64,000 bases of DNA, taken from assembly GCA_002269645.1 (NCBI GenBank), contig NIVC01001298.1:124001-188000 (forward strand). Reading direction: 5' to 3'. The translations under genes were made by a program, and so were the position numbers. The notes beneath the pieces were generated by a model, which was not told the origin of the DNA, searched no databases, and worked only from the letters and a program-made list of their open reading frames with translations. This document shows positions 9,656 to 54,624 of this stretch, one piece after another. Each line of letters begins with the position of its first letter. Position 1 is the stretch's first letter. This DNA comes from Macrostomum lignano (taxonomy: Eukaryota).

Positions 9656-12550
9656 CTATAGGGATTCTAGGGGTAGTTTGTTAGTTTCAGCGGCGACTTG
9701 TCTTTTCTCTACTACTTTTTCCAACTTCTTCTTGACTATCTTATGAGCTTCCTCTAATCTTTCGGCATGCTTAGTAATGTAGGCGGGATAGTCAGCGTGT
9801 TCTGCTGTACTTCTGATCTGGGTGTCTAAAGGTAAGGTGGCTTCTCTGCCAAATAACAGGAAGTGAGGGGAAAAACCTATGGTTGAATTGGGGCTGGTGC
9901 GGACTGGTACTAAGGCTGCGGGAATTAATAAATCCCAATCACCATGATCCTTATTGATCAGACAGGTGATGATTGACTTGACTTGCTTATTGAAACGTTC
10001 AATTAGTCCATTAGATTGGGCATGGTAGGGGGTAGTGAAGGTGTGGCAAATATTATAAAGTTCGCAAAAAGCTTTAAATTGTTTACTAACGAAAGTTTTT
10101 CCATTGTCTGTGTGGATCCAGGTGGGCTGTCCATATTCTGCTACTATCCGTTCAAGTAGTATCTTAATAACTGTGTCTGATTTTTGGTTTCTAATGGGAA
10201 AAGCGAAGGGGTATCTAGTTGTACTGTCAACAACTGTCAGGACATATTTATGACCTCGTTTGCTTTCTTTAGAAATTGGACCGATAATATCTATGTGCAG
10301 GCGGCTAAATGCTTCGCCAATGGGGAATGACTGGACTGGGGCCTGGACAAAGTGTCCTTTCTTGCTCTCAAGGCAGGGGATGCACTCAGCAATTAATTGC
10401 TCAACTGAGGTGCTCAGTCCAGGTTGCCAAAATCTTTCTCGGATCCTCTGGAGCGTCTTATCTCTTCCTAGATGTCCTGCGAGGGGGCTGCAGTGAAGGT
10501 CAGTAAAGACTGCTTTATCTAAGGATGGGGGCAAAACAATTTTGGTTTTTTCGTCTTCAGTAATTGTTAATAATTCGTTATTGATTTTCATCAGCGCATA
10601 ATGCTTACTAATCTTTTCTGGCATGTCCGGTGATTTGGGAAATTGGCTCAATTTCTGGGCCTTAGCTTCTAATAAAGCTTTAATGATGGGGTCAGCAACT
10701 TGGGCTTCTATAATCTGTTCCTTCTTTAGGGGACTGGGGAGGTAGTCAGTTAATAGTTTCTCACACTTTCCTGTCTCTTCTTCTCTTTCATCTACTTCTC
10801 TACCTGAGACAATTAGCTTTGTCCTAGAGTTGGGACATTCAGGCTGGGTCTCGCTTTCTGTCAGGGCTTCAGGTGACTGGGACATGGGGTTGTCCTTAGT
10901 TTCAGCAGGAACACTCTCATCTCTCAGGGGAACAGGGGTCAATTTCTCAACTTTCTCAGGGATTGGCTCAGTTCTCTCAAAATTTTCTTCAGATGCTTCA
11001 GGAGGTTCAGGGATCGCTTCAGCAGGCTCATTGGCTGCGTCAGGGACTTCAGAAACTTCAGGTGCTGTTTCAGCAAGTTCAGGGGCTGCTTCAGGGGATA
11101 CTTCAGGGGCTTCAGCTATCTCAGCTGGTCTTCTCGACAATCCGTCAGCATTGGAATGTTTAGCGCCGCTACTGTGTTCAATGTCGAACCTGAATTCGTT
11201 CAGACGCTCTATCCATCTACCTAGGATTCCGGTTGCTTCAGTTTGTCTCATGAGCCAAATTATCGCTTTATGATCAGTTTGGGCTAAGAATTTCTTGCCG
11301 ATCAGATAAAATCTGAAATGCCTCATAGCGTCGACAAGAGCTAACAATTCTTTCCGAGTAATGGGGTATCGTTTCTCTGATTCCTTCATCGCTCTACTAA
11401 AATAGGCTATTGGTTGCTCTATGCCATCACTCTGGATTTGGCCAAGGCATGCGCCAATCCTGTCATCACTGGTATCTGTGTCGAGCACCATCTTCACATT
11501 CTCATCTTTGACATATTCGGGGTAGGCTAATACTTCAGTGGACATCATTCGCTGCTTCAGGGACTCAAAGGCTTCGTCATGCACTTTGCTCCACTTAGAT
11601 TGGAAATTCTGGACTCCTTTTCGAGTTAATTGGAATAGGGGGTGAGCCACTTCAGCATAATTCTTCACAAATCGGCAATAATAATTGCATAGGCCAAGAA
11701 AACTGCGTAATTCTTTTACATCTTTGGGACGGGGCCAAGTTTGGATTGCTTCAATCTTCATCTTGTCTGTTTGAATGCCTTGTCGGCCAATCACATGTCC
11801 AAGATATTTCAACTTGTGATGGAAAAGATTGCACTTTTTGGGTCTCAACTTCAGACCTGCAGCAATTAGTCGCTTAAACACTTCTCTTAGGTGTTCTAAA
11901 TGTTTGGCAAAAGTTTGGGAGTAGGCGATTATGTCATCGATATAGGACATGGCGAACTTATGTTGGATTCCTAATAGGACTAAATTCATTAGGCGTTGGA
12001 AGGTTCTGGGGGCATTGGAAAGTCCTTGGGCCATTACTTGGTATTCAAATTGGCCTCTAGTTAGGGTGGAGAAGGTGGTTCGATGTTTGTCTTCTTCTTT
12101 GATGGGGACTTGCCAGTATCCTGAGTTTAAATCAAGGCTGCTAAAGTATTGGCTACCAGTTAGGTGGGAGAAGGTCTCTTGGATATTGGGGAGGGGGTAG
12201 GGGTAATAATTAACTCTTGAGTTGAGCACGCGGAAATCGCTCACGATTCTAATAGAACCGTCTTTCTTGGGGACAATTACTAGGGGGGTGGAGTAGGTTG
12301 AGTAGCAGGGTCTAATTAGGTTTTTGGCTAACATATCGTCTAATTGGGCGTCAACTTGCTTTTGCAAGTATGGGGGGATGCGTCTAGCTGGGATTCTAAC
12401 TGGGGTAGGGTCTTTGATAGAGATTTGGTGGGTTACTAAGTGTGTCAGGCCCATGTCTAATTCATTCTGGGAAAAGGCTTCACGGTTTTCTTTCATTAAG
12501 TCGATGACTGCTTTTCGCTGTTCATCCGACAGTTCAGGGCCAAGGCTCAC
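9656..12550 (-). CDS. pol: Gypsy pol: reverse transcriptase, RNase H, integrase (964 aa open segment)
   Basis: RT motifs LDLNSGYWQV, MAQGLSNAPRTFQ, YIDDII, YLGH; RNase H DTS...ELLA...TDH...NADGLSR; IN HHCC (LHCSPLAGH...CIPC) and D-D-E (IDIIGP, TDNG, IERFN). Confidence 0.97.
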   Translation of the reverse strand: MSLGPELSDEQRKAVIDLMKENREAFSQNELDMGLTHLVTHQISIKDPTPVRIPARRIPPYLQKQVDAQLDDMLAKNLIRPCYSTYSTPLVIVPKKDGSIRIVSDFRVLNSRVNYYPYPLPNIQETFSHLTGSQYFSSLDLNSGYWQVPIKEEDKHRTTFSTLTRGQFEYQVMAQGLSNAPRTFQRLMNLVLLGIQHKFAMSYIDDIIAYSQTFAKHLEHLREVFKRLIAAGLKLRPKKCNLFHHKLKYLGHVIGRQGIQTDKMKIEAIQTWPRPKDVKELRSFLGLCNYYCRFVKNYAEVAHPLFQLTRKGVQNFQSKWSKVHDEAFESLKQRMMSTEVLAYPEYVKDENVKMVLDTDTSDDRIGACLGQIQSDGIEQPIAYFSRAMKESEKRYPITRKELLALVDAMRHFRFYLIGKKFLAQTDHKAIIWLMRQTEATGILGRWIERLNEFRFDIEHSSGAKHSNADGLSRRPAEIAEAPEVSPEAAPELAETAPEVSEVPDAANEPAEAIPEPPEASEENFERTEPIPEKVEKLTPVPLRDESVPAETKDNPMSQSPEALTESETQPECPNSRTKLIVSGREVDEREEETGKCEKLLTDYLPSPLKKEQIIEAQVADPIIKALLEAKAQKLSQFPKSPDMPEKISKHYALMKINNELLTITEDEKTKIVLPPSLDKAVFTDLHCSPLAGHLGRDKTLQRIRERFWQPGLSTSVEQLIAECIPCLESKKGHFVQAPVQSFPIGEAFSRLHIDIIGPISKESKRGHKYVLTVVDSTTRYPFAFPIRNQKSDTVIKILLERIVAEYGQPTWIHTDNGKTFVSKQFKAFCELYNICHTFTTPYHAQSNGLIERFNKQVKSIITCLINKDHGDWDLLIPAALVPVRTSPNSTIGFSPHFLLFGREATLPLDTQIRSTAEHADYPAYITKHAERLEEAHKIVKKKLEKVVEKRQVAAETNKLPLESL

Positions 12551-12569: not shown

Positions 12570-13622
12570 TCAGTACATTGAGTCTGGTTGACTTTTGCAG
12601 GGGTTGGGGTTGGGAGTTGGGGTTTGCCAATAGGTCAGGTCTTTAGCTTTCATGGGTCTGGCTAGGCCAATTAGGGAGGTTTTTGTTAAATTCACGTCTA
12701 CTGGGTGACGGTTAATAATTTCAACAATTCCTTTGCCTTCTTTCATGGTTACTAAGGTCGGAACCATTTCTAATGAGAAATCACAGGTTTGGATAGTATC
12801 GTCAATGGCTTCAATGGTCGTGGGAGTGCCATAATTCGATTCACAATTCTTGGCTAGCTTCACGGGTATTCGGAAGGCACTATTAGCTGGGATGATTACT
12901 CTTTCTTGAGTATAAACTCAACAAACTTTCACAGGTAGGCGGGTATACTGCATGGGTATACAGGTACCTTCATTGAGCACTAGCATTCCTTTGGCTAGCT
13001 GAATGCTTTCACATTGGGATAGGAAAAATTCCATACCTAGAATATTGTCACAATCATGTCGGCATAGGAGGAAATCAACTTCGATTTGGATATCGCCAAA
13101 TTTCACTTGGGCGGATACTTCTCCTAATTGAACTGGGGTACCGTCAAATGTACTAATGCTTTTGCTAGTGTCTCGGATTTGATCAGAAAGGATTAGCTTA
13201 GACCAGGTTGAGCGGCTCAGGAAATTATTTCTGGCGCCTGTGTCTAGCAAGAAATCAATCGATTCTTTCTGGATATCGCTGACTATTACAGCTTCATAGC
13301 CTTCTAGCTTGGTTAGGTCGATTTGGGATGGGGAATTGGGTTTTAGCTTTTGTCGCTTCTTTGAGCGGGTTTCAGCACTGAATAAAGCATTATTGGTTTT
13401 AATCGCATGGGATACATGGGGTGCAAGTGCAGTGGGTACACAGGGTGCGGACACATGATGTACAAAAGCTTTGGTCGAATTGGTTACATGAGAGGCGGTC
13501 GCATGGGGGGAATTGTACACATGAGGGTCATGGGGGGCATTTGGCATAACATCGTCGGCATCATCAAAGGCAAGAAGTGAAAAATTATTGGGGGAGACAG
13601 ATATCACATTATTTACAGGCAT
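12570..13622 (-). pseudogene. Gypsy aspartic protease and post-protease linker (broken)
   Basis: FLLDTGARNNF active-site motif and DNILGMEFF; a stop and frame change separate 12918-13622 from 12570-12863. Confidence 0.85.
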
Positions 13623-14881: not shown

Positions 14882-15875
14882 TGTTACAGGGGTCTTGGGG
14901 GAGGGAAGTTATCCTATTGCTGACACCAATTCTGTTGTAGGGTGAGGTCGAGGGTTATTGGGAATTTTCAGGGTTTTCTTAGAATTCAGGGCGAACTGCG
15001 CAATTTATACTACTAACAGGAGTAAGCTGTAGGTTGCTCCTGGTGGCGTGGTGTGTCCGAGCGGCAAGACACAGTTTCTATTCTCAGTCTGGGAAATATA
15101 GATGGGAGAGGGGAATTAAGGGCTTCGCGATGGATCGGAGTTGCCTGGGAAAGTGTACTAATGGGGAATTTCTAAATACTAATAGGGAATGCTGACAGCA
15201 TTAGATAAGAAGGCAATCTGCCTAATGAATGTGGGAAATTTCGACTAGGAAGGGTTGGGATTAGGAGCAGGGATGCCGGGGGGGGGGGCAGACTGTATGT
15301 CTAAGGGAATAAGGCTGTACACCTGAGCAAACAGACTGTCTACTAAAAGGGGGGAGGGGCAGAAGCGGCGGGCGCCAGTTCTGCTGGGAGAAGGGAAAGA
15401 GACAAAACTCGGGGGGGGCAGGACTGAACGTCCCTGGGAAAGGGGGAAGAAGTTTTAAACACTTCTAACTGTACAAGCTTCGCAGGGGGAAAGGTGGAAT
15501 GCCTTTAAATGACTAAGACAGCTATTTTTAGAACAGTGTTCAGTTACAACCGCTGAATAACTAGGCTAGCGGAGGTCTCAGCGAACAAAGCAGTTCAGCA
15601 GGGAGGAAGCGAGCTTTTCTTTTCTCAATTTATTTTCTTGCTTATATAGGATTTGCTAACAAATGGCGGACGCATGTAAACTAATAAAACACTAGATTAT
15701 ATGGTAGGCTACTAATCAAAACTAATAATTGCTACTAATGACATAAAAAATATTTATTTATGTAGGCACAATAATTTCTTGTAGTTTTTAGAAAAATAGT
15801 CGTATTATACGTGAAATCAGTAGGCAAAATAGACAAAAATAGGCAAAGTAGGCAAAATAATAGGCAACTGTTACA
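14882..15875 (-). repeat. Gypsy 5' LTR
   Basis: Direct repeat of 6378-7376; adjoins PBS; followed by TSD AAAG. Confidence 0.95.
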
Positions 15876-15894
15876 AAAGTAAAATAAATGGATA

Positions 15895-17187
15895 TGAGGG
15901 GCACTATTAAAGTTCTGAGCCTTAATATGAAAGAGAGGAGATATGGGCAAAGTGAGATCAGCTTTTCTCAACATAGTCTCCCCCAACCAAGATGCACTTA
16001 TGGCATCTTGATCGCAGCGCCTCAATGCCACTCTGGAAGAATTGCACCGAGCAGCCCTCAAACCAAGCAGTTGCAGCATCCTTCAGCGCATCATCAGTGT
16101 CAAATCGCTGTCCACGGAGTGCCTGCTTGAGATGTGGAAACAGGTGGAAGTCGCTCGGGGCCAGGTCTGGTGAATAGGCTGGGTGCGGCAGCTCTCGAAA
16201 CCCTGCGACACTGACAGCAGCCTTGGCAATCCTGCTAGTGTGGGCCGGTGCATTGTCGTGCAGCAGCACAACACCTCGGCTTAGCATCCCTCGCCTATTT
16301 TCCTTGATTGCCTCGCGCAGACGGGCGATCAGGTCAGCGTAGTAGGCGCCTGTGACTGTCTGCTTGTGCGGTAGAAAGTCCAGCAGCAGCGGGCCCTTGG
16401 CATCCCAGAAGACGGTGAGCATAATCTTGCCCGCACTGCATGCAGTCCGTGCCTTCAGTGGTGCAGGTGAACCAACTGGCAGCCACTGCTTGGACTCCTG
16501 CTTGGACTCGGGATCGTGGTAATGGATCCACGTCTCATCCCCGGTCACGCAGCAGGACAGAAAGTTGGCAGGGTCCGGATCGTAGGAGTCCAGGACAAGC
16601 TTTGAGTACTGCACCCGTGCGGTCTTTTGGTCCCTTGTCAAGATTCGTGGGATCCATCTGGCAGAAACCTTGGACAGATAAAGATGCTGGTGCAGGATCT
16701 CAATGACTTGCGGGTCAGAGAGTCCAGTGTCTGCCGCAAGTTCCCTGACTTTCACCCGCTGGTCACTGTCAACCAGAGCCTGGAGGCGCTGGATGTTGTC
16801 GGCAGTGACAGCAGTCCGGGGTCATCCACATCGGGGGTCATCTTCGAGCGAGTCGCGGCCACGCTTGAACTTGGCTGCCCAGCGCTTTATGGTGGCGTAT
16901 GAGGGGGCAGCGTCAGCGTACACACTAGCCATGCGGCTTTGAATTTCAGCAGGCTTTGAGCCCTCCAGAGTCAGAAATTTAATCACTGCCCTGTGCTCAA
17001 GCTTCAATTCTTGAGAAAATGCCATGGTGTGCTGGAAATAAAATGGTGCAGTGGGACTTAGGGAATGCAGAAAATTCTGAAAAGTTGACAATAGACTATT
17101 AACATGTGGCGCTTTTAGAGCCTAAAGTTTCAACACTTTGCCACTATAAGATCTTGGTCAGGCTCAGAACTTTAATAGTGCCCCTTG
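15895..17187 (-). mobile_element. mariner (DD34D) transposon, 1293 bp
   Basis: ~28-bp TIRs (.)AGGGGCACTATTAAAGTTCTGAGCCT, TA duplications at 15893-94 and 17188-89. Confidence 0.97.
15958..17025 (-). pseudogene. mariner transposase with a single in-frame TGA (16822-16824)
   Basis: MAFSQELKLEHRAVIKF...; TGDETWIHY, LHDNAPAH, YSPDLAPSDFHLF; 34 residues between 2nd and 3rd Asp; both ORF pieces share one frame. Confidence 0.95.
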
Positions 17188-19836
17188 TACATTTTTGTAT
17201 CTTTTATAGGCTTTTTTCAACTCAAAACTTTGTGCTTTATTTTAGCTCACATAGAAAATTGTTAAAAGAATTAGCTTTAACTTTGGTAAAATGCTATTTT
17301 GAATAGTTATAGGTCCAAAAGGTGACAATCAAAAAGGTGATTGTCAAAAGGGCAATAGTCTTTTTATTGCAGGTAATTTGCTTACTTATTTTTAATGTGT
17401 ATGGGGTTACAGTGAATTCAAACTAAGTGAATTTACTTTGCAAAAATAAATAGACATGGCTAAAGAATAATTGGACTTTGCATTTGATATTTCTTTTAGA
17501 AGAGTGCTAGTATTGGTTAGTATGTCATATAATATAAAGAGGGGTAAGATTTGTTTCTTATTGAACACATTTTGTTTGTTTTAGCATTTAGCTCAAACTG
17601 ACAGAGGTGTAATACAATTAGACTATGGATAGAGAACCCATTAATTTTTACATGTAAAAATGGGGTATGTGTGAAATATACTCATACTACTAATTGTTAT
17701 ATAGTTTTACTATGTGATTTTATAAAGCCAAGTATATATGGCGAAATCCAAAAACGTGGGACATATTTTTTCAGATTTCATTTTTTGCAAGTAAAAAACA
17801 AGTAAATGGCTAAGAATTATTGAAAATCTACCAAAGAATCAAGAAAGTATAATAAAAGCACAAATAAACTGTATATAAAGTGTTCTTGAAAGAAAAGATT
17901 TGTTAAAACTTTGAACTAAATAACGATTAAAATAGTGCTGATAAAACAGTTAATAAAGCTTTTTTACTATAGTAAATAACCTTAAATAAGTTATTTGTAT
18001 CCAGTTTTTATTAGCATGGTCACATTTTGCAAATAATTTAGTTGTATTTTGTTAATGTCATTGTTGCTCCTAACAACATTTATAATTTGCGATTAAAAGT
18101 GGTTACTTCTTGGAGTCATTTACTAAATTGAACGCGTCATTTATGTGTTAGGGAAAATTAAATTTACCTATTAATACTTAGTAAACCTCTCTTTTTAGAG
18201 TATCAACTGTAAAGCAAGTTAGAAGAGTGCCATTATAAGTTTAAAGTACAATTTTTACCTGCAATAACTATGAATTTAATTTGCAACATCTTTTTTTAAT
18301 TTAACAATAATTAAAAATTCTCGAGATTTAAATTCAATTATGCTTTTTCCTTTGCAGAGTGCTCCATGATACTGAATGCAATCAGTAATCCAAGTCTCAG
18401 ATTTTAAGTCTTCCAGAACGATTATTTCGGCATATTGATTAACTTTTGATATTAAATATACAATGTAAAAGATTTTTCAGATTTTTCAATGTCAAACATT
18501 TTTAATCAAAGAAAAGGTCTGGCATTAATCTATTTAAATTTAAGCACTTTAACTCATGCATCAAGTTCTGTTAATAAGAAACTACTACTAGTGTTAATTA
18601 TATATTTGAATTGTTATTACAAAACTTAAAAACAGTATTAACATTAAAAAAATACAGAACATGAAAAGTAACACTTAATAAAAATAACATTATATTAATT
18701 AATAATGTGATAATTCTTCTTACAAAATGCAGTAAAAAAGCAAAAAAAATTATTACAAAACTTATTGGTGTAGCATTTAAAAAACATTAAGGTGCCAATT
18801 TGCTGAGTTATTTAAACCTCTTCAAATTTTCCAAAGAAGTTAAATTTGACTTTCATATTTTGTGTTTCTTGATTTTCCTTCATTTATTTTTTATAACTGC
18901 AAATTGGCACTTGTCTCCCTTCTTTCTACATGCCACTAAGTCAGTGACTGCTTCGTCTTCATTTTTTTTCTTTCTTTGGGTGTTTGATTTACTTTCCCCT
19001 TTGGTGGCACTTCCAACATTGGGCACTTCTTTTTGGCAGCAATATAGTCCTGGACTGTGTACGTTTTGTCCATTATCTGAAATGTAAGCACAAGAATGAA
19101 CTGAATTAGTTGGAGGTTGGAACCAAAAAATGAATTGGCTTTAAGCAGAAAAAATGTAAATAAATGCACTATAGTGGCATGGCTTATCTAATGTAGGCCA
19201 GAATGACATTTAATAGACTTTTAAATTTCATAAACTTTTAATAGACATTCTCTACGAGAGGAGTTAAGTCTTGAGCTTCAGAAAAAGTATAAATCATGTA
19301 ATATTTGGCTTATGTAAGTACCATTAAATAAGTGGGTTACACCATGCAACAACAAATAACTAATAAGTATATGTTTTGTAAGTGTCAAAAGGAAATGAAT
19401 AAGACAGAAGACAAAGTCAGCTAAACATTTATTCCTGTCAGCTACACAATGCTGACCCTAAATAATTGACTAAGCTCAACTACTATTGCAGTAATAAGGG
19501 TCCCTAAGTCCCTAGTACTTATAGTCAAATTTTGGGTTGCATAGCCATTAGATGAGCTGATGCACACTTGTAGACGATGCAGCTTTGTACTTTGCCATAG
19601 TGTAGTCCGTGTAGTGCAGCTTGTAATTCACCAGTCGCCATAGTGTAGTCCTTCATCCTGGTGTTATCAGCTGAGTCCATCCTCGTCCTAGGTGTTTAAA
19701 ATATTTTATTAGCATTATTACTGCGTAGCATAATCAATGACTTCATAGACCTATATTTTAATACATGTAGAAGTGTACTAAAAAAGTAAAAAAGAACTAA
19801 AAGTATTAAAGTCAAAAGTCTATACGCAGGCATCCA

Positions 19837-20053
19837 TCAGTCATCCCTCCTACAATCCTCGCAAAAGTACATGTCAGGTAGGTCGTTGTAGTCAAAACCA
19901 ATACAGTAAAGGTGGAACCAGTCATCACATCCATCACAGGCAGTCATTTCTATCTCTTGGCGCTCCGGTGGCAGGCTTGGGATGATGCAGTCTGGCGCCT
20001 TGCACTTGTTCCAGTCGCCGCCATGTCGTCCTTCATCCTGTTGTCGGCGGCCG

Positions 20054-20089
<36 letters not shown>

Positions 20090-22664
20090 GTTGGTGCTGT
20101 CCCGTCGGCCGCTTGCTGGATGGTCCTAGTTTGTGCCGGTGCCAATGGTACCCAGAGTAAAGCACCATGGCAGCTGCAGGTCTCGGTGGGATCAGAGCAG
20201 CAGCAAACTAGCTGCCTGTAGATGATCCCTGCCTGCGTCCGGCTCACGTGGTGCGTGTAGCGAATACCTTTCATGTCGAGCAGATTGGCAGCGCTGATGT
20301 ATTCCATCCATGTGTCGATTTCCGCCGATGTCACTGTGAACAGTTTGGTCTTCAGTTGTTTCTCCGCATTGAGCACTCGCAGCATGTCGTCTAGTGAAGC
20401 AACATCAGTTCCTGCTGCTGCAGCTGCGTCGCATTGTCGCTTGATGTTGCCGCCCACTCCGTCCGCGGCACCTTTGCCATGTCCAGCCTCCGTGTAGATC
20501 CATTGCCAGTCGCTGATGTTTCGCCTGCGCATAAGCTCATCAAAGCCAAAGATATTCTTCTTGTTACGATATTGGCTGCTGGGCGAGTCCGAAATGATGC
20601 TGACTCGCCTGATGCCGGAAGCTGCGAAGTGGTCTAGGACAAGGCTAAGATGTGCTGCTATGGCACCAGCAACCTGGAGATTCAGATAAAGATGCATTCC
20701 GGTTAAAATATTGGAAGTTGGGTCTATTTCTACAAGTTTTCCCTAACACTTCTTTCAGACAAAAATGTCTTACTTTGCGGTTGTCATCAGACAGCGATGC
20801 GAAGGACTTTGCGATCACTTTGGGGTTGCCTGGTACCCTCCAGTAGGCGACGCCTTGGTGGATGGTCACCTCACTGTGGCCACCAAAGTGTGCAGCTGTA
20901 ACTTCAGTTCCGTACTTGAGTCTGTAGTTCTCGGAGAAGTCCACATGCAGGAGCAGGTGACCTGGCTTTAGAGACGCCTTCAGTTGTTCAATTGCTACAT
21001 ATTGATGACGAATTCGCATGTAGTGGCCAGCATAGTCAGAGAGGTCCTTGTCTAGCTTGGCGATGATCTCCTCCTTGGTGGCTGTTTTGTCGATCAGTTT
21101 CGTAGATTGGAACCTGGATTCCTGAACAATTTCCCAGGCCTTGTAGTGCACGGTTTCTAAAGCTGGTCCCTCTGGATTGATGGCAGTCTTGTTTTGGCAG
21201 CTTGTGCACTGTCTTTTAAAGCAAGCATGCTGTTCAGAGTTGGTACAGATGCTTGTTTTCAGCAGCTTATGCTTGTCCTTAGACCTGACAAGCTTGACCG
21301 CATGCATGGCAGCGAGGAGCAGCTACAAACAAAATAGTGCAAATCAATGTGCAAGTGCAATTTGGGCGTCGTGCAGTGTGCAGTGTGCAGTGTGCTATAG
21401 ACTTGTGAAATGGTGTTAGTTATTACAAACTACTAAAATTAGTAAAATTACACAGTATTAGTATTTTACATACATCAAGGTTGGTGCATTGCTTGCAAAG
21501 ACACTGGTCCCGGTCATCCAGCCGTGGCTTGACAATGTACCGCGGTTTCCACTTGTAGAAACTGCTTCTGCTCACTTTGCAATTCGGATGCTCCTTCTTG
21601 AACTTCTTGAAAAGGGCGTTCCGAGTGCGAAGGAGATACCTCTTCTGGTGATGGACTCCCTTGACGCAGATGGTCTCCTTCTTGGAAGCACTGGCGCGTG
21701 TGTTGTCATTTCGCTCGTAGAACTTGATGACCAGGGCTTCTTGTTGGCGCTCGACCCGATGCTTTTGTACCTTCTTCACAACCTTGTGGGTGCATTGGAA
21801 TTTCTTTAGGACCTTCTCTCGAATGTTGGCAGGTGCAGACTTGCAGATCTTGGACACGGTGAGTCGGACGGCAGTCAGCTTCTTGTTGGACACCAGGGCA
21901 TCGATGATGTGGTCGGTCGTTTCGACATCCTCAGCAGATGAAACCTGAAAACCTAAAATGGGGTAGGCGGATGATTTTTGTGCAGATTTAAGCTCCCTAA
22001 TCTTTTTGCGAAGCCTCTCTGATTCAGCTCCAGCAGCCACCATCCGGTTCGTGAGCTTTGCTCGCTCTCTCTGAGTTGCAGCGGCAGACTTCAGGTTGGA
22101 CTTGGTCACAACAGTACTGTCAGCAGTCTGGACGTCGGCCTCGGTCATCACAGTACTGTCAGTCTGGACGTCGGCCTCGGTTGTCACAGTACTGTCAGCA
22201 GTCTGGACGTCGGCCTCGGTTGTCACAGTACTGTCAGCAGTCTGGACGTCGGCCTCGGTCATCACAGTACTTTCAGTCTGGACGTTGGCCTCGGTTGTCA
22301 CAGTACTGTCAGCAGTCTGGACGTCGGCCTCGGTCATCACAGTACTGTCAGTCTGGACGTGGGTCTCAGTTGTCACAGTACTGTTAGCCTTTGAATCCAC
22401 AGTACCTGCGTCCTCAGCGGTGATGGTGGCTGCTGCTGAATCACGGAGTTCCTGCTTCTTCTTGGCTCTTGACTTGGCCATGGCCTTCCGCTTTTGCTCA
22501 CGACGAACACTCAGCTCTTCATCTGTTGCCGTGGCAAGCTGCTTCTGGTAGCGATTGCGGTCAGACTCACGTCGGCGCTCCTTGAAGGTGGGGTCCATGG
22601 CTTTCTGTTCCTGATATTGTTGAACAGAGCTGAGCTTCCTCTTGGAGCACTTGGTCTTCGTCAT
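19837..22664 (-). CDS. Three-exon 858-aa DDD transposase with N-terminal tandem repeats and C-terminal PHD finger (exons 22664-21474, 21322-20774, 20673-19837)
   Basis: Canonical GT-AG phase-0 introns join an uninterrupted frame; motifs LHVDFSENY, SDSPSSQYRNKKN, EAGHGKGAADGVGGNIKR; PHD CKAPDC...CDGCDDWFHLYC...YFCEDC. Confidence 0.85.
22090..22385 (-). repeat. Coding tandem repeat, 7 units of 36/39 bp (T/M-TEADVQT(A)DSTV)
   Basis: Visible in DNA and in translation of 21423-22664. Confidence 0.95.
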
Positions 22665-22994
22665 ATCTGAAACTGTGAATTAGCAAAAATTACAGTAGCA
22701 CATAGTACATAAACTATACTATGTACTACTGTAATTCTTGCTTTTTCTCAACACTTGTACAACATAGAATTGTGAGTAAACTTGAGTGCTTTACTTTTGC
22801 CATGTGCAAGGTGCAAAGTGCAAGGATTTACACTGCTAACAAATCCATTGGAACTTACAAAATTTTTAATAGTTAAATAATAAAATCATTTTGTTTTCAT
22901 TGTGCTATACCTCATCATGCACAATACAATTGTTGCTATAAATTTGCAAGACTCCAAACCAGAATGTTTTTGTCTGCTTCGAAAAATAGAAAAT

Positions 22995-23153
22995 TGAAGG
23001 TTCAAGTATTTCTCTTCTTGAGGTTTCCAGTGCTTTTAGTGATATATTGAAGGTTCAAGTATTTCTCTTCTTGAGGTTTCCAGTGCTTTTAGTGATATAT
23101 TGAAGGTTCAAGTATTTCTCTTCTTGAGGTTTCCAGTGCTTTTAGTGATATAT
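22995..23153 (+). repeat. 53-bp tandem repeat x3
   Basis: TGAAGGTTCAAGTATTTCTCTTCTTGAGGTTTCCAGTGCTTTTAGTGATATAT at 22995, 23048, 23101. Confidence 0.95.
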
Positions 23154-23568
23154 TTGTATGGACCAGTCACTAAAGCAGGGTTGGGGGTTGCTATTATATA
23201 GCATATATACTGTGCTTTCCACTCACCATTGTCTTTATCTTTTATATCTAGTTATGTAACAATTGTTGCCTTATTTTTAACCTGGGTTATTGATCTAATA
23301 AATGAAAAGAAGCTTTGTCAATTATCAGTCACATCTTTTGGGTATATTGCCAGTCTGCAAATAGTGTTTTAATAATTTAATCATTAATCAATTCAACATT
23401 GGTGAATAGAATTGGCCATGATCTGCAAGTGTATCAAGGGATTCAGTTAGCTGTCCTAAGATGCTAAACTAGTTTATAACAAAATGACAAATACCAAAAC
23501 TGCCTTACTAGTTGTTTGAAGTGTATTATACATAGAAATTATAAAAGTACACTTCTTCAACACCTTAT

Positions 23569-24260
23569 TTGGAAGCCGGGTAACACATTAGAATTCCCAT
23601 AAGGATTGGAAAATCGCGTTTTTCTTAGCTTCTACAACACCTATTGAGAAAATTTTTTTCCTGCATACACGCCACGATGATACACATTTAAGTGAAGTTT
23701 CACGATACCTGGTTGCTTAATAAGCTTACAGTAAGCGCTTACTTTGGAAGCCGGGTAACACATTAGAATTCCCATAAGGATTGGAAAATCGCGTTTTTCT
23801 TAGCTTCTACAATACCCTATCAAGAAAATTCTTTTTTTCCTGCATACACGCCACGATGATACACATTTAAGTGAAGTTTCACGATACCTGGTTGCTTAAT
23901 AAGCTTACAGTAAGCGCTTACTTTGGAAGCCGGGTAACACATTAGAATTCCCATAAGGATTGGAAAATCGCGTTTTTCTCAGCTTCTACAATACCTATCA
24001 AGAAAATTCTTTTTTTCCTGCATACACGCCACGATGATACACATTTAAGTGAAGTTTCACGATACCTGGTTGCTTAATAAGCTTACAGTAAGCGCTTACT
24101 TTGGAAGCCGGGTAACACATTAGAATTCCCATAAGGATTGGAAAATCGCGTTTTTCTCAGCTTCTACAACACCTATTGAGAAAATTCTTTTTTTCCTGCA
24201 TGTATGCTGCGATGATGCATATTTAAGTGTAAGTTTATGATATTTCATTGCTTACTTTGT
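23569..24260 (+). repeat. ~178-bp tandem repeat, ~4 copies, inside the Sola-like element
   Basis: TTGGAAGCCGGGTAACAC... starts at 23569, 23744, 23923, 24101. Confidence 0.95.
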
Positions 24261-24981
24261 CTACAGGATGCATTTGATTTGATTTCCGGATTTAAATTTT
24301 GTGGTCCAAAATTTTTCACTGAAATTTTTAAAGCCTGAATATGGCCTATTATGAACAATACCATGATACAAGTCAATACTTAAATCAAAGAAGACATCTT
24401 AAAGATTATTTTGCAACAAGAAATAAGTGGTATACTTACTTCGGGAGAAAAAGGTTTGCTAGCAAAGTTTGCGCTTTGAGTTAGTATCGAGTTTTTGAGA
24501 GTTTAGGTGGTTTTAGAAAAAGTTCAAAATCTTTTGAACTGCTTGTTCTTTTTAAAAAAATAAAAAGTAAAACACAGAATTCTTTCTCCTTTGTAGGCAA
24601 AAGAAAAAAATAGCCTTTTTTGAGACTAAAAAGTCTTATAATTAATTGTTTATTTGCAAAAAAAGTGAAAAAAATAATCGTGAAGGTGTCAATATGCTTT
24701 TTAGTGGTTTTGCTCGTTTATTCAGCAATGCAGTGGTATAAAAATGAATTTTGTGTCCTGAACTTTTTTTTAAAGACTTACCTGTCCTTTAAAATGCTTT
24801 TTCGGATACATTACCTTCCATTCAAAGTCCACAGATTTGTTTTACCGCTTTATCCCACGTTTTTGGATTTCGCCATATGTATTAGTACACCAGTGCATAT
24901 ATTTAGTCTGATTAACAACAAGTTTTTTGCGGGTATAGACCCACTTTATTTTAAAAACACGGGTGATCCCAACAATGTAAG

Positions 24982-25781
24982 TGTCACGTTATTTGATGTT
25001 GGCCGTGACCCTTAAAAGGGCCGTTTTAGTCCCAAAATAAGTTGAAGTCAACTTAGGCGAAGTGGATGGTGTAGCGGAGCACTTGGCAATAAGGGCAGGA
25101 AACTGCCGTAGTCGTTTTTATTATCAATATAAATAGTAAGTTTGGTTGTTACTGGCAAATAACAAACTATTGCTTTCTGGGCACTGGCGGCTGCAACAAT
25201 GGTTTCTTTTAAGATAAATTGGATGTGAGTTCAAGCGAAGACGAGTGATGTAATGGCGACGTAACGGGATGATCAATGGCAATGAGTACAGTGAAGGCAG
25301 TGAGACGTAGTAGGCAGGCAGATGAGCAGTGGCGAGGTTGGCGTCAGCCGTGGCGTGAGGTAAGGAGGCTCGAGGCAGCCAGACAGAGAGAAGGAAAACA
25401 AGGCCGCAAAAACACACACAAGGCCAAGGATAGACGGAGAGAGAGCGAGAGAGAGAGAGGAGAGGAGAGTGCCCGCCGCCAGGCGGGGGGTTTAATAAAG
25501 GAGCGCAGAGGGGGGTAGCGTGAAGCACGAGTGGTTTTCATTGGCTGGCGAGAGAACTTAAAATTATCGATCGTGCCAATTTTATACGGTCGCGAGAGAG
25601 GATAGCAAAATATACAGTGAATAAGAAATTGCCACAAAATCGTTGGGCATTACTACAAGTAAACGTCGCAATAAACAAATGGAAAAGTTTAGTTGAAACG
25701 GTGAAACTGAAGGGTTGAAACTATAGAGAAACAGCAGTCCAACGGCCCTTTTCGGGACCACCTCAAACTGACAACGTCACA
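24982..25781 (-). mobile_element. Solo LTR (same family as 49923/53802)
   Basis: TGTCACG...CGTCACA termini, 5-bp TSD GTAAG on both sides, high similarity to 49923-50745; orientation taken from PBS/PPT of the family. Confidence 0.95.
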
Positions 25782-48405: not shown

Positions 48406-49922
48406 ACATACGAGCTGTACAGTATGAAACCAAAAGTAGCAAATACTATAATGAATGAATATAATGATAATGTATACTTGTTCAATTTAAAACCTGGTTT
48501 TTGAAAAAAAATTCTCCGCTATTTTTGAAAAGTCATATACATGTACACCGTACTAGGACATAAAGTGCGTAACTGTAGTAAGCCATGTAGTATTCTACAT
48601 GGTGCGACTTTGGTTGCTGTCCGTCAGTCAACGTGTACTATGCATCGACACTTAGTGCAAGCGGCCTGTGCGATAAAAAAGTAACTTTAAAATAACTTTT
48701 TAAATAAGAATCAATATTTTAGGGTGCAGAATAGGGAGGGAGCTAAATATGTGGTAGGGTTTGGTTTGGGGCGGGAGCTGGATATGGGTGGGGTTATTGT
48801 AGTGCTTTGTATTGTAGTGGGAAAATTAAGTGTAGCGATTTAAATAAATGACGCGTAAGGCGGTGGTTCTTTGTGTTCAGTTTTGTTTAAAAGTTTTGTA
48901 TAGAAAAGTCAGGCTTGAAGAAATGCAATGCCGGGTGCTTTTATTTATACCCAATTTCGGGAATATTCGGGAAGCGTGTTCGCAGGAGTTTAAATTGCCT
49001 AATTTAGAATGTTGTTAAATGTTTACGCGCCACAGAAACTTCTAGAAAGGTGGATACGATAAAAGAATAGAAATACAATAGAAAGTTAAATTAGCTTTTT
49101 AAATGCTATTACTTGAATGAATCCAAAGCAAATTAATGAATTTCCTACTTTTTGGGACTTAACGAAAGTCCCAATAACAATATAGTGAGAGCGTACAAAA
49201 ATGCGAAAATGAAATAAAAACAATTGTCCTTCTCGTCTAAGCTAATAAAAGGTGCAAATCAGTCAATTATCAATAAATATACTTCGTGTGCCAGTTTTAC
49301 CAAATCGGCGCCTTGTATACTTTACGTAGATATGGCGCGTTGGTACTTAAGATAGCGTGAACTGTTCATATACAAGCAGAATTCACACGGGAATGCAATA
49401 GAAGTTTTGTAAACGGTTCTCGCGAAAAATATAAAAATCGTGTTTAAGACATCGATCCTTCACAAGGCCCTATTTGAGGGGTTGAGCCAATCAAGGTACG
49501 ATTCCTAAGGAAAATAATCCTAGCAGAAGAGGAATCTGCGGTAAGCTACCTAATACGAGCTACGCTCATTTATTTGAGTCAAGTATGTTAGCCTTCTATT
49601 GTGCTAGGCATGCACTGTTGTTATTGAGCAGACCGGACGCGTTCTTGGGTGTGTATCCTGAGAAGTATTAACAAGGTAGATCTAGTGTTACGGGATTAGA
49701 ATACACTGTAGACTAAGATATTTCACTTGTGCGTTCCGGGGTTCGCGTCCTTTCCTATACGCAGTGCAGTGCCGAAGTAGTCTGTTTCTCCGTATAGATT
49801 TTGACATACCGGTAACATGTTCGTGTCTGGCATATCGATTACCGATCGGAATTGAAAAAGGAACTACAAAATAATAAAACTAGTCAAGGAGCCACTGGCG
49901 AAGCAGCGTCGCTGGTAGGCAG

Positions 49923-50745
49923 TGTCACGTTATTTGATGTTGGCCGTGACCCTTAAAAGGGCCGTTTTAGTCCCAAAATAAGTTGAAGTCAACGTAGGCG
50001 AAGTGGATGGTGTAGCGGAGCACTTGGCGATAAAGGCAGGAACTGCCGTAGTTGTCTTTATTGTTAATATCAGTATTAAGTTTGGTTGTTACTGGCAATA
50101 AACAGACTATAGCTTTCTGGGCACTGGCGGCTGCAACAATGGGTTGAATATAATTTGGATATGAAGTCAAGTGGCAGGCGAATGACACAATGGCGATGTG
50201 ACGTGAGCAGTGGCTATGAGCACCGTGAAGGCAGTGAAACGTAGTGGCGAGTTTGGCGTCGGTCGTGGCGTGAGACAGTCAAGTAAGCGTGTGAGCAGGC
50301 TGGCCCAGGCAGAGGGGCCGTGGTGAGAAATAAGGAGGCTCGAGGCAGCCAGACAAGAACAGAAAAACACACACAAGGCCAAGGACAGGCCGGGAGGAAG
50401 AGAGAAGCACAGATAAGGACGGGAGTGAGGAGTGCCCGCCGCCAGGCGGGGGTTTAATAAAGGAGCGCAGAGGAGGGGTAGCGCGAAGCGCGAGTGGTTT
50501 TCATTGGCTGGCGAGAGAACTTAAAATTATCGATCGTGCCAATTTTATACGGTCGCGAGAGAGGGTAGCAAAATACACAGTGAGTTAGAAATTGCCACAA
50601 AATCGTTGGGCATTACTACAAGTAAACGTCGCAATAAACGAATGGAAAAGTTTAGTTGAAACGGTGAAACTGAAGGGTTGAATGACTATGGAGAACAGCA
50701 GTCCAACGGCCCTTTTCGGGACCACCTTAAACTGACAACGTCACA
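49923..50745 (-). repeat. 3' LTR
   Basis: TGTCACG...CGTCACA; PPT GGAAGGGAGGCGGG (minus) at 50746-50759. Confidence 0.95.
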
Positions 50746-53801: not shown

Positions 53802-54624
53802 TGTCACGTTATTTGATGTTGGCCGTGACCCTTAAAAGGGCCGTTTTAGTCCCAAAATAAGTTGAAGTCAACGTAGGCGAAGTGGATGGTGTAGCGGAGC
53901 ACTTGGCGATAAAGGCAGGAACTGCCGTAGTTGTCTTTATTGTTAATATCAGTATTAAGTTTGGTTGTTACTGGCAATAAACAGACTATAGCTTTCTGGG
54001 CACTGGCGGCTGCAACAATGGGTTGAATATAATTTGGATATGAAGTCAAGTGGCAGGCGAATGACTCAATGGCGATGTGACGTGAGCAGTGGCTATGAGC
54101 ACCGTGAAGGCAGTGAAACGTAGTGGCGAGTTTGGCGTCGGTCGTGGCGTGAGACAGTCAAGTAAGTGTGTGAGCAGGCTGGCCCAGGCAGAGGGGCCGT
54201 GGTGAGAAATAAGGAGGCTCGAGGCAGCCAGACAAGAACAGAAAAACACACACAAGGCCAAGGACAGGCCGGGAGGAAGAGAGAAGCACAGATAAGGACG
54301 GGAGTGAGGAGTGCCCGCCGCCAGGCGGGGGTTTAATAAAGGAGCGCAGAGGAGGGGTAGCGCGAAGCACGAGTGGTTTTCATTGGCTGGCGAGAGAACT
54401 TAAAATTATCGATCGTGCCAATTTTATACGGTCGCGAGAGAGGGTAGCAAAATACACAGTGAGTTAGAAATTGCCACAAAATCGTTGGGCATTACTACAA
54501 GTAAACGTCGCAATAAACGAATGGAAAAGTTTAGTTGAAACGGTGAAACTGAAGGGTTGAATGACTATGGAGAACAGCAGTCCAACGGCCCTTTTCGGGA
54601 CCACCTTAAACTGACAACGTCACA
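53802..54624 (-). repeat. Shared (5'/3') LTR
   Basis: Has a PBS on one side and a PPT (54625-54638) on the other. Confidence 0.95.

What the first reader, a model, noticed from the sequence alone, without database searches (positions are those of the whole stretch)
19837..22664. Apparently intact Sola-like transposase fused to a PHD finger with H3K4me3-reader hallmarks
Seen: three phase-0 exons give an uninterrupted 858-aa protein inside perfect 22-bp TIRs and an ATAT TSD, while every other transposase in the window is broken. The C-terminus has a (GR)n stretch followed by a Cys4-His-Cys3 PHD finger, EMTACDGCDDWFH. Established: the Met and the Trp before FH correspond to aromatic-cage residues of H3K4me3-binding PHDs of the ING type. 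Inference: a recently active element that reads chromatin marks to choose targets or regulate itself.
Basis: partly seen in the sequence, partly recalled or inferred. Interest (0 to 1): 0.75.

Follow-up and report, generated by a model that had tools for sequence, protein, structure and literature searches.

The report
Intact Sola2 transposon with PHD finger
This is a complete, apparently functional 7.1-kb "Sola2" cut-and-paste DNA transposon, probably from a flatworm, whose transposase ends in a small zinc finger of the kind that reads a histone mark of active genes. That suggests, but does not prove, that the element uses chromatin marks to choose where or when it jumps.

Summary
On the minus strand, three phase-0 exons (22664-21474, 21322-20774, 20673-19837) encode an uninterrupted 858-aa protein. 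It lies inside a 7,135-bp element (17740-24874) with perfect 22-bp TIRs and an ATAT duplication.

The core is a Sola2 transposase, not Sola1 or Sola3. It aligns colinearly with Sola2-1_HM and keeps the invariant residues D525, D609 and D651. The model shows an RNase H-like fold, and the AT-rich 4-bp TSD is the one published for Sola2. A 1.5-kb deletion derivative with the same TIR in Macrostomum lignano confirms the element's ends and suggests a flatworm host.

The C-terminus is (GR)7 plus a real PHD finger, strongly acidic, with an unusual C-x4-C first pair. Its nearest solved relatives by sequence and by fold are almost all H3K4me3/me2 readers (PHF2, MLL5, Spp1, CFP1, KDM5 PHD3, BPTF). Only two of the four classical cage positions (M823, W832) are kept.

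The fusion is not unique. A 46%-identical relative has it, and several distant Sola2 genes carry a "basic stretch + PHD" last exon. Most of the rest carry a Tudor-like tail instead.

Histone reading, target choice and recent activity remain inferences. I rate this a new variant of a known kind, of moderate interest.

The parts
17736..17739 (.). Left copy of the ATAT target-site duplication
   Evidence: Sequence read directly. It matches the published AT-rich 4-bp TSD of Sola2 (AWWT, including ATAT; PMC3627910).
17740..17761 (+). Left 22-bp terminal inverted repeat GGCGAAATCCAAAAACGTGGGA
   Evidence: Perfect inverted pair, 0 expected by chance. A similar terminus lies at the left end of the M. 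lignano non-autonomous copy in L005.
17762..19836 (-). AT-rich region (30% GC) downstream of the gene: 3' UTR or subterminal DNA with no convincing ORF
   Evidence: Only the outer ~255 bp is shared, at 66% identity, with the L005 copy.
19837..20673 (-). Exon 3 (aa 581-858 plus stop). Carries D609 (20587-20589), E642, D651 (20461-20463), (GR)7 (20047-20088) and the PHD finger (19852-20004).
19852..20004 (-). PHD finger, spacing C-x4-C-x16-C-x2-C-x4-H-x2-C-x13-C-x2-C. Candidate methyl-lysine cage residues are M823 (19945-19947) and W832 (19918-19920). Net charge is -10 over the last 55 aa.
   Evidence: Pfam 28 bits against a cut-off of 24. PDB sequence hits. AF2 model at pLDDT 70 and Foldseek hits. 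Charge.
20674..20773 (-). Intron 2, 100 nt, GTAAGA...CTCCAG, phase 0
   Evidence: The junction is colinear with P0014 and P0019.
20774..21322 (-). Exon 2 (aa 398-580). Carries the Cys-rich stretch and the first catalytic Asp, D525, in HVDFSENY (20939-20941).
21323..21473 (-). Intron 1, 151 nt, GTATGT...TTTGTAG, phase 0
   Evidence: The same donor position and sequence occur in relative L003.
21474..22664 (-). Exon 1 (aa 1-397): basic helical N-terminus, an in-frame 39/36-nt minisatellite (22104-22388, aa ~94-185) and the conserved KQKRYL / CLCxxC region
22665..24852 (-). Upstream and subterminal region with a 53-bp x3 perfect tandem repeat (22993-23154) and a 178-bp x3.8 tandem repeat (23564-24236)
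   Evidence: The outer 1.3 kb, including the 178-bp repeats, is 78-81% identical to the L005 copy.
24853..24874 (-). Right 22-bp terminal inverted repeat
   Evidence: It is 22/22 identical to the right TIR of the M. lignano copy.
24875..24878 (.). Right copy of the ATAT target-site duplication

Best explanation
Window 17740-24874 is a full-length autonomous DNA transposon of the Sola2 group of the Sola superfamily, probably in a macrostomid flatworm genome.

SHOWN OR STRONGLY SUPPORTED.
- Its single three-exon gene encodes an 858-aa DDD transposase with an RNase H-like core. D525 is on beta-1, D609 follows beta-4 and D651 sits at the start of the helix after beta-5.
- By analogy with other DDD/E enzymes, this protein would bind the 22-bp TIRs, excise the element and insert it at AT-rich 4-bp targets, here ATAT.
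- The ORF, the catalytic residues, the TIRs and the TSD are all intact, so the copy is potentially active.
- At its C-terminus the enzyme carries a basic (GR)7 stretch and then an acidic PHD finger of the H3K4me3/me2-reader class.

INFERRED.
- The PHD finger binds the methylated H3K4 tail through a two-residue half cage (M823, W832).
- That binding tethers or activates the transposase on promoter-proximal, open chromatin, much as the RAG2 PHD does for RAG1/2 or the chromodomain does for chromoviral integrases.
Some relatives carry a PHD and most carry a Tudor-like domain.
For: SOLA2 IDENTITY.
- The published Sola2-1_HM core (Majorek 2014 supplement) aligns colinearly with aa 525-646 (E 3e-6).
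- It aligns strongly with this protein's own homologues: P0012 at 53% identity and E 4e-47, P0010 at 1e-26, P0005 at 4e-19. Those homologues match our protein at E 1e-57 to 1e-23.
- The Sola1 and Sola3 cores give only marginal hits.
- The family is large: 522 representative clusters at E<1e-30.
- D525, D609, E642 and D651 are invariant.
- In the AF2 model the core has pLDDT 80-90 and the order b1-b2-b3-a1-b4-a2-b5-a3. The Foldseek hits are Argonaute PIWI, RNase H1, the Mos1 transposase and NurA.
- Literature: Sola elements encode a DDD transposase, make 4-bp TSDs, are 2-9 kb long and have TIRs of 11-1124 bp (PMC10741241). Sola2 TSDs are AT-rich AWWT, including ATAT (PMC3627910).

ELEMENT ENDS.
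- The perfect TIR pair is unique in the window.
- An independent 1.5-kb deletion derivative lies in M. lignano (L005 15611-17134). Its right TIR is 22/22 identical and 1.3 kb of subterminal DNA is 78-81% identical. The similarity stops exactly at the TIR, in an (AT)n flank.

GENE MODEL.
-.
- Ka/Ks is about 0.43 against relative L003 over 214 codons.

PHD FINGER.
- It scores above the Pfam cut-off.
- The best PDB sequence hits are PHF2, MLL5, Spp1, KDM5B, CFP1, PHF13, PHF23, SHL/EBS, PHF8, Pho23, KDM5A-PHD3, BPTF, TAF3 and ING. M823 and W832 align with their Met and Trp.
- The PHD-only model (pLDDT 70) retrieves the same H3K4me3/me2 readers with TM about 0.5 and probability about 1.
- Net charge is -10, which suits a basic histone tail rather than DNA.

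SELECTION ON THE TAIL.
- P0019 (46% identity) has the same (GR)n + C-x4-C PHD. P0014 (48%) keeps a truncated remnant.
- Distant Sola2 genes P0027, L013, L015/L017 and L052/L053 end in a 'basic stretch + PHD' exon.
- Across six such tails seven zinc ligands are invariant. The position 3 residues before Cys3 is Met or Trp in five of the six (the sixth has a gap in the alignment there), and the Trp before x-His is present in 5 of 6.
Against: - Only two of the four classical cage positions are kept. The residues aligned with the two Tyr of PHF2 are not aromatic. The first zinc pair has the unusual spacing C-x4-C. Binding strength and methyl-state preference therefore cannot be read from the sequence.
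- In the full-length model the PHD has pLDDT below 50. The isolated-domain model reaches only 70 from a 3-sequence alignment, and only one of the five models is good.
- There is no evidence of recent movement. The window holds one copy. The TIR is absent from the metagenome collection. The exon products are not in the protein or contig collections. The only other copy found is about 20% diverged.
- No RNA evidence for the splice sites was available.
- Close relatives P0015 and P0016 have the GR tail but no PHD was seen within the 900 nt downstream that I translated. The PHD is therefore dispensable in at least some lineages.
- The ATAT TSD lies in AT-rich DNA.
Confidence: 0.55

Rival explanations
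1. The PHD-like finger is a DNA-binding cysteine-rich domain, like the C-terminal CRD of the piggyBac transposase. On this reading it recognises repeated motifs near the element's ends, such as the 178-bp or 53-bp subterminal repeats, rather than histones.
For: [quoted passage not shown] This element has conserved subterminal tandem repeats. The basic (GR)7 stretch next to the finger could contact nucleic acid.
Against: The finger is strongly acidic, at -10 over 55 aa, which is unfavourable for DNA. By sequence and fold its nearest relatives are histone-tail readers. The Met/Trp cage positions are conserved across the unrelated Sola2 PHD tails even though TIRs differ between families.
Confidence: 0.1
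2. The PHD finger binds chromatin or a partner protein but works mainly as a regulatory switch, not as a targeting device. It might autoinhibit until a mark is bound, as in RAG2, or limit activity to germline or stem cells. Alternatively it reads a different state, such as H3K4me0/me1/me2 or a non-histone N-terminus.
For: Only half of the cage is present, and acidic residues surround it: E822, D827, D830 and D831. Among the hits are PHF2 bound to a non-histone VRK1 peptide, EBS/SHL with dual H3K4me/H3K27me3 binding, and a BPTF Y17E mutant bound to H3K4me2. The RAG2 PHD and acidic hinge are reported to be inhibitory until engaged (PMC12337333).
Against: Nothing in the sequence distinguishes regulation from targeting. 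The conserved Trp before x-His is typical of methyl-lysine readers rather than H3K4me0 readers; this rests on my own knowledge of the BHC80/AIRE class and was not tested here.
Confidence: 0.25
3. The copy is an inert relic or a host-domesticated gene, and the PHD is an incidental captured exon with no role in transposition.
For: The window has a single copy and no identical copies were found anywhere. The coding region holds an expanded minisatellite. Close relatives P0015 and P0016 show no PHD in the 900 nt translated downstream of their genes.
Against: The TIRs are a perfect 22/22 pair, the TSD is intact, the 858 codons are uninterrupted and every invariant family residue is kept. A non-autonomous derivative with the same ends exists, as expected for a mobile family. 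The PHD tail is retained across relatives at 46% identity and recurs in distant lineages with conserved ligands. Ka/Ks is below 1.
Confidence: 0.1

Closest known systems
Sola2 DNA transposons (Sola superfamily; e.g. Sola2-1_HM of Hydra, Sola2 DFa-2 and PPa-1 of dictyostelids)
   Same: The DDD core is homologous and shares the motif series DF(S/A)EN(Y/I) ... SD....QY(R/K)N ... W.(F/Y)....HGK..D. The TSD is 4 bp and AT-rich, including ATAT. TIRs are short and the size falls within 2-9 kb.
   Different: The sub-lineage is divergent: about 21% identity to the Sola2-1_HM core, with the best database relatives at 30-48%. The C-terminal (GR)n + PHD finger is not mentioned for Sola in any paper I could search. 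The Bao et al. 2009 and Yuan & Wessler 2011 texts were not available.
RAG2 PHD finger with the RAG1 (Transib-derived) recombinase
   Same: A PHD finger of the H3K4me3-reader class is coupled to an RNase H-fold DDE/D cut-and-paste enzyme. There it links cleavage to active chromatin (PMC12337333 and PMC8355894).
   Different: Here it is fused in cis to the transposase of a mobile element from an unrelated superfamily, and no binding data exist.
Cross-brace zinc fingers of other transposases: piggyBac CRD, PiggyMac/Tpb2 CRD, Rehavkus PHD
   Same: All are C-terminal or internal PHD-like fingers in cut-and-paste transposases. Tpb2 and Pgm contact H3 tails (PMC8086355). Rehavkus is described as having a PHD finger and a minisatellite near the 3' TIR (PMC6446971).
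   Different: [quoted passage not shown] The Pgm CRD is not a PHD fold. None of these is from the Sola superfamily, and none is reported as an H3K4me3-type reader.
Chromodomain of chromoviral (Gypsy) integrases, and host tethers such as LEDGF/p75
   Same: The concept is shared: a mobile-element integrase is directed by a histone-methylation reader.
   Different: This point rests on my own knowledge and was not tested here.

Membership tests
Sola2 (Sola superfamily of DNA transposons) | Transposase core homologous to reference Sola2 transposases rather than to Sola1 or Sola3 | tested here: met
   The Sola2-1_HM core matches our protein at E 3e-6, colinear over 126 residues. It matches our protein's homologues at E 4e-47 to 1e-12. 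Sola1 and Sola3 cores score E >= 0.2 against our protein.
Sola2 (Sola superfamily of DNA transposons) | DDD catalytic triad on an RNase H-like fold | tested here: met
   D525, D609 and D651 are invariant. The model places them on beta-1, after beta-4 and at the start of the helix after beta-5. Foldseek hits are RNase H-fold proteins. Catalysis itself was not tested.
Sola2 (Sola superfamily of DNA transposons) | 4-bp, AT-rich target-site duplication | tested here: met
   ATAT lies on both sides and cannot be extended. The published Sola2 TSD is AWWT, including ATAT. Caveat: the flank is AT-rich and no empty site was available.
Sola2 (Sola superfamily of DNA transposons) | Terminal inverted repeats that delimit the mobile unit | tested here: met
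   A perfect 22-bp pair, unique in the window. The same termini delimit an independent deletion derivative in M. lignano.
PHD finger (Pfam PF00628) | Cys4-His-Cys3 cross-brace ligand pattern and a profile score above the curated cut-off | tested here: met
   28.0 bits against a cut-off of 24. All eight ligands are present, seven of them invariant across six Sola2 PHD tails. The first pair is C-x4-C rather than the usual C-x1-2-C, and the Pfam alignment starts after it.
H3K4me3/me2-reader subclass of PHD fingers | Aromatic or Met cage around the methyl-ammonium group: classically four positions, two in half-cage readers such as KDM5A PHD3 (own knowledge) | tested here: inconclusive
   M823 and W832 align with the cage Met and Trp of PHF2, MLL5 and Spp1. 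The top 50 fold matches are nearly all H3K4me3/me2 readers. The positions aligned with the two N-terminal Tyr of PHF2 are not aromatic.
H3K4me3/me2-reader subclass of PHD fingers | Measured, methylation-dependent binding to the H3 tail | not testable with these tools
   Needs peptide binding by ITC, NMR or arrays with recombinant aa ~795-858.
Currently active autonomous transposon | Several near-identical copies, insertion polymorphism, or demonstrated excision and integration | not testable with these tools
   The window has one copy. The host genome is not in the searchable collections. The intact ORF, TIRs and TSD are necessary but not sufficient.

The most novel reading that the evidence does not exclude
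Sola2 transposases as a lineage carry an exchangeable C-terminal histone-methylation reader. Most have a Tudor-like barrel; this element and several others have a basic stretch plus an H3K4me-type PHD finger. Sola2 would then be the first cut-and-paste DNA transposon group with a built-in, cis-encoded chromatin-mark reader that sets insertion preference. It would be a mobile counterpart of the RAG1/RAG2-PHD arrangement, and this copy would be an active representative usable for testing.
Probability: 0.3. Interest if true: 0.75.

Novelty: new variant of a known kind. Interest (0 to 1): 0.5.

Why it matters
No Sola element has, to my knowledge, been shown to transpose experimentally. An intact copy with defined ends gives a concrete candidate to test. 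If the host is Macrostomum, which is a transgenesis-capable flatworm, the test could be done in its natural setting.

That turns a general question, how DNA transposons choose chromatin, into a simple experiment: peptide binding, then insertion profiles of wild-type against cage-mutant transposase. It also gives a free-living parallel to the RAG2-PHD/H3K4me3 coupling.

If the finger does not bind histones, the locus is simply a well-preserved new Sola2 family.

Tried and rejected
- The inverted-repeat search near the gene (18500-24500) found no TIRs. Widening it to 10000-34000 found the real pair.
- No empty-site paralogue exists in the window: the joined flanks match nothing else.
- The word-indexed protein search gave only 13 distant hits with the full protein, 10 with the alignment and none with the PHD alone. 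The exhaustive representative search was what found the close relatives.
- An exact-match search for the TIR in metagenome contigs found 0 matches. The two large exon ORF products are not in the contig collection. Copy number and polymorphism therefore could not be assessed.
- The protein-guided metagenome scan returned only distant Sola2 loci at 27-58% identity.
- The Bao et al. 2009 and Yuan & Wessler 2011 papers could not be read. Sola2 reference sequences and TSD rules came from the Majorek 2014 supplement, Bao & Jurka 2013 and a 2023 review.
- The relative L006 has perfect 23-bp TIRs but no clear 4-bp TSD. It was not used as evidence.
I replaced it with a regex and BLAST clustering analysis.
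- The Tudor-like tail has no Pfam hit and only a weak PDB profile hit to the PHF19 Tudor domain, E 0.06. 'Tudor-like' is therefore tentative.
- Rfam and tRNA scans of the window found nothing.
- Rejected as chance: the EBNA2_Core Pfam hit at 20.9 bits against a cut-off of 35. It comes from the low-complexity GR/Pro-rich stretch.
Full report
WHAT IS IN THE SEQUENCE

The gene lies on the minus strand. Joining 22664-21474, 21322-20774 and 20673-19837 gives 2,577 nt, which encode 858 aa without an internal stop. The introns are 151 nt (GTATGT...TTTGTAG) and 100 nt (GTAAGA...CTCCAG). Every exon length is a multiple of three, so both introns are phase 0.

Several results support this exon structure:
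- Composition fits. Exons are 50-55% GC, introns 34-35% and the rest of the element 30-33%.
- Intron-less homologous ORFs from a JGI sample (P0014 and P0019, 48% and 46% identical) run straight through both junctions without indels.
- A Logan contig carrying a 62-69% identical relative (P0017/L003) ends at exactly the same donor...CTNLD|GTATG. It also has the same TTTCAGAT-ATG start context.
- Over 214 aligned codons against that relative, Ka/Ks is about 0.43.
- No transcript data were available.

THE MOBILE UNIT

No inverted repeats flank the gene closely. A wider search finds GGCGAAATCCAAAAACGTGGGA at 17740-17761 and its perfect complement at 24853-24874. These are the only two matches in the window even with 3 mismatches allowed, and none is expected by chance. 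ATAT flanks both ends, and the repeat cannot be extended to 5 or 6 bases.

The element is therefore 7,135 bp, with about 2.1 kb of AT-rich DNA on each side of the gene. That DNA includes a perfect 53-bp x3 repeat and a 178-bp x3.8 repeat on the 5' side of the gene.

Independent confirmation of the ends came by chance. I fetched a Macrostomum lignano locus because it encodes the 39%-identical relative P0016. That locus (L005) also holds a 1.5-kb element at 15611-17134:
- Its right TIR is 22/22 identical to ours.
- Its inner 1.3 kb, 178-bp repeats included, is 78-81% identical to our right arm.
- Its left 255 bp is 66% identical to our left arm.
- The similarity stops exactly at the TIR, in an (AT)n flank.

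That is a non-autonomous deletion derivative of the same or a sister family. It shows that the TIRs and subterminal repeats belong to the transposon, and it suggests a macrostomid flatworm host. The host identification is an inference.

WHAT THE PROTEIN IS

Pfam recognises only the PHD finger. Reference cores of Sola1-1_AP, Sola2-1_HM and Sola3-1_HM are printed in the supplement of Majorek et al. 2014.
- The Sola2 core aligns colinearly with aa 525-646 (E 3e-6).
- It aligns far more strongly with this protein's own homologues: P0012 at 53% identity and 4e-47, P0010 at 1e-26, P0005 at 4e-19.
- The Sola1 and Sola3 cores give only marginal matches.

An exhaustive search finds 5,370 relatives, of which 522 clusters score below 1e-30. 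Every one whose source name I looked up is called 'hypothetical' or 'uncharacterized', apart from two UniRef members of the M. lignano cluster that are labelled 'ATP-dependent DNA helicase'.

In the alignment with the ten closest relatives, D525 (HVDFSENY), D609 (SDSPSSQYRN) and E642/D651 (EAGHGKGAADGVGG) are invariant. The AlphaFold model is confident for aa 450-735. It shows the RNase H order b1-b2-b3-a1-b4-a2-b5-a3, with the three Asp at the expected places. Its PDB fold matches are Argonaute PIWI domains, RNase H1, the Mos1 mariner transposase and NurA. The E-values are weak, but the matches are uniformly RNase H-fold.

Published descriptions fit. Sola elements encode DDD transposases, make 4-bp TSDs, are 2-9 kb long and have TIRs of 11-1124 bp (PMC10741241). 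Sola2 TSDs are AT-rich AWWT, explicitly including ATAT (Bao & Jurka 2013, PMC3627910). I therefore file the element as a new, divergent Sola2 family.

THE C-TERMINAL TAIL

After the core come (GR)7 (aa 776-789) and a finger with ligands C804, C809, C826, C829, H834, C837, C851 and C854. The spacing is C-x4-C-x16-C-x2-C-x4-H-x2-C-x13-C-x2-C. It passes the Pfam PHD cut-off, although the alignment starts after the unusual first pair.

Against all PDB sequences the best matches are PHF2, MLL5, Spp1, KDM5B, CFP1, PHF13, PHF23, SHL/EBS, PHF8, Pho23, KDM5A-PHD3, BPTF, TAF3 and ING. In the printed alignments M823 and W832 sit on the Met and Trp of FMIECDACKDWFH (PHF2), YMICCDKCSVWQH (MLL5) and LMVGCDGCDDWFH (Spp1).

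The finger modelled alone reaches pLDDT 70 with the expected two-stranded sheet. It retrieves the same set of H3K4me3/me2-bound PHD structures at TM about 0.5 and probability about 1.

Two points weaken the match. The residues aligned with the two N-terminal cage tyrosines of PHF2 are not aromatic, so this is at best a half cage. From my own knowledge, KDM5A PHD3 and MLL5 bind H3K4me3 with such reduced cages.

The last 55 residues carry a net charge of -10. That argues against a piggyBac-CRD-like DNA-binding role (PMC8086355) and suits a basic histone tail.

THE FUSION IS NOT UNIQUE

- P0019 ends in (GR)n plus CAAANC...WVQCDGCNGWQHWQC...CSPEC. It shares the odd C-x4-C pair. P0014 keeps GR repeats and a truncated start of the finger.
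- P0015 and the M. lignano protein P0016 have the GR tail, but no finger was seen in the 900 nt translated downstream of each gene.
- Among 150 representatives, P0027 has a canonical PHD-like end and P0142/P0155 have a Cys-rich variant. Fifty-one of the 66 long-tailed members share a different ~90-aa tail, W.V.YDG..YPG....D....V..M...G.N.F.WP.
- That other tail has no Pfam match. Its best PDB profile hit is the PHF19 Tudor domain at a weak E of 0.06.
- Among 70 distant Sola2 loci from metagenomes, probably host DNA of marine worms, about 25 carry the Tudor-like tail. L013, L015/L017 and L052/L053 carry a last exon made of a basic stretch plus a PHD finger. In L013 it is in frame with the 909-aa transposase ORF, after an intron-like gap.
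- Across six Sola2 PHD tails seven ligands are invariant. The residue three positions before Cys3 is Met or Trp in five of the six (the sixth has a gap there), and the Trp before x-His is present in five of six.

So a reader-like C-terminal module is the rule in this lineage. The PHD version is a minority form, but it is conserved and evidently selected.

HOW IT MOST LIKELY WORKS

Shown or strongly supported:
- It is an autonomous Sola2 element with an intact DDD transposase, intact ends and a genuine PHD finger of the methyl-H3K4-reader class.

Inferred:
- The finger binds H3K4me3/me2 through M823 and W832.
- It thereby tethers or activates the transposase on open, promoter-proximal chromatin.
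- The closest functional parallel is the RAG2 PHD with RAG1/2. PHD-type fingers are also known in Rehavkus and piggyBac-family transposases.

My confidence by step:
- About 0.9 that it is an intact Sola2 element with a true PHD.
- About 0.55 that it reads methylated H3K4.
- About 0.35 that this sets insertion-site choice.

'Recently active' rests only on intactness. I could examine one copy, and the only other copy found is about 20% diverged.

NOVELTY

Sola2 and PHD fingers are both well known, and PHD-like fingers occur in other transposase superfamilies. The locus is best called a new family, and a new architectural variant, of a known kind. Its main value is as a testable, intact representative.

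Noticed in passing
window 22104-22388 (minus strand, aa ~94-185): An in-frame minisatellite of 39- and 36-nt units, about 7.5 copies at 85-90% identity, inside exon 1. It encodes TEADVQTADSTVT-type repeats. It is absent from the 62-69% identical relative P0017 and is predicted disordered (pLDDT below 30).
   Followed up: partly
window 22993-23154 and 23564-24236: Subterminal tandem repeats on the 5' side of the gene: 53 bp x3.1 at 100% identity and 178 bp x3.8 at 95%. The 178-bp array is also present, at about 80% identity, in the M. lignano non-autonomous copy (L005 16016-16539). It may be a transposase-binding or promoter array.
   Followed up: partly
L005 15611-17134 (Macrostomum lignano NIVC01000504.1): A 1.5-kb non-autonomous deletion derivative with the same 22-bp TIR, inserted in an (AT)n tract. 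It lies 3.5 kb downstream of an unrelated, 39%-identical Sola2 gene (P0016).
   Followed up: yes
window 22665-22672, and L003 45-52: A conserved TTTCAG lies two bases before the ATG in both this element and relative L003. It could be a cis- or SL trans-splice acceptor for the transposase mRNA.
   Followed up: no
Family-wide: P0020, P0023, P0028-P0035 and others; loci L008, L014, L027, L036, L059 and others: Most Sola2 relatives end in a conserved ~90-aa domain with no Pfam match. It is tentatively Tudor-like, with a best PDB hit to the PHF19 Tudor domain at E 0.06. One relative (P0026) carries an OTU protease domain instead.
   Followed up: partly
window 15897-17185: A 1,289-bp mariner element with perfect 26-bp TIRs. 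Its transposase is split between two frames (ORFs 16822-17091 and 15958-16755), so it is broken.
   Followed up: partly
window 9656-12550 and 12918-13622 (minus strand): A Gypsy-type LTR retrotransposon. It has an open 964-aa pol ORF (RT, RNase H, integrase) and a separate aspartyl-protease ORF. LTRs were not looked for.
   Followed up: no
window 24980-25360, 49921-50274 and 53802-54153: An unidentified ~380-bp dispersed repeat at 82% identity. One copy begins about 100 bp to the right of the Sola2 element.
   Followed up: no
L006 440-5606 (JGI 3300040801): A related Sola2 element (P0015, 41% identity) bounded by perfect 23-bp TIRs (CAGGGTCGTTCGCAAATCTTGGG), 5.2 kb long, with no recognisable 4-bp TSD.
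   Followed up: partly
window 18890-19082 (minus strand): A short 64-codon ORF (MDKTYTVQDYIAAKKKCPMLEV...) in the AT-rich 3' part of the element. Its significance is unknown and it was not searched.
   Followed up: no
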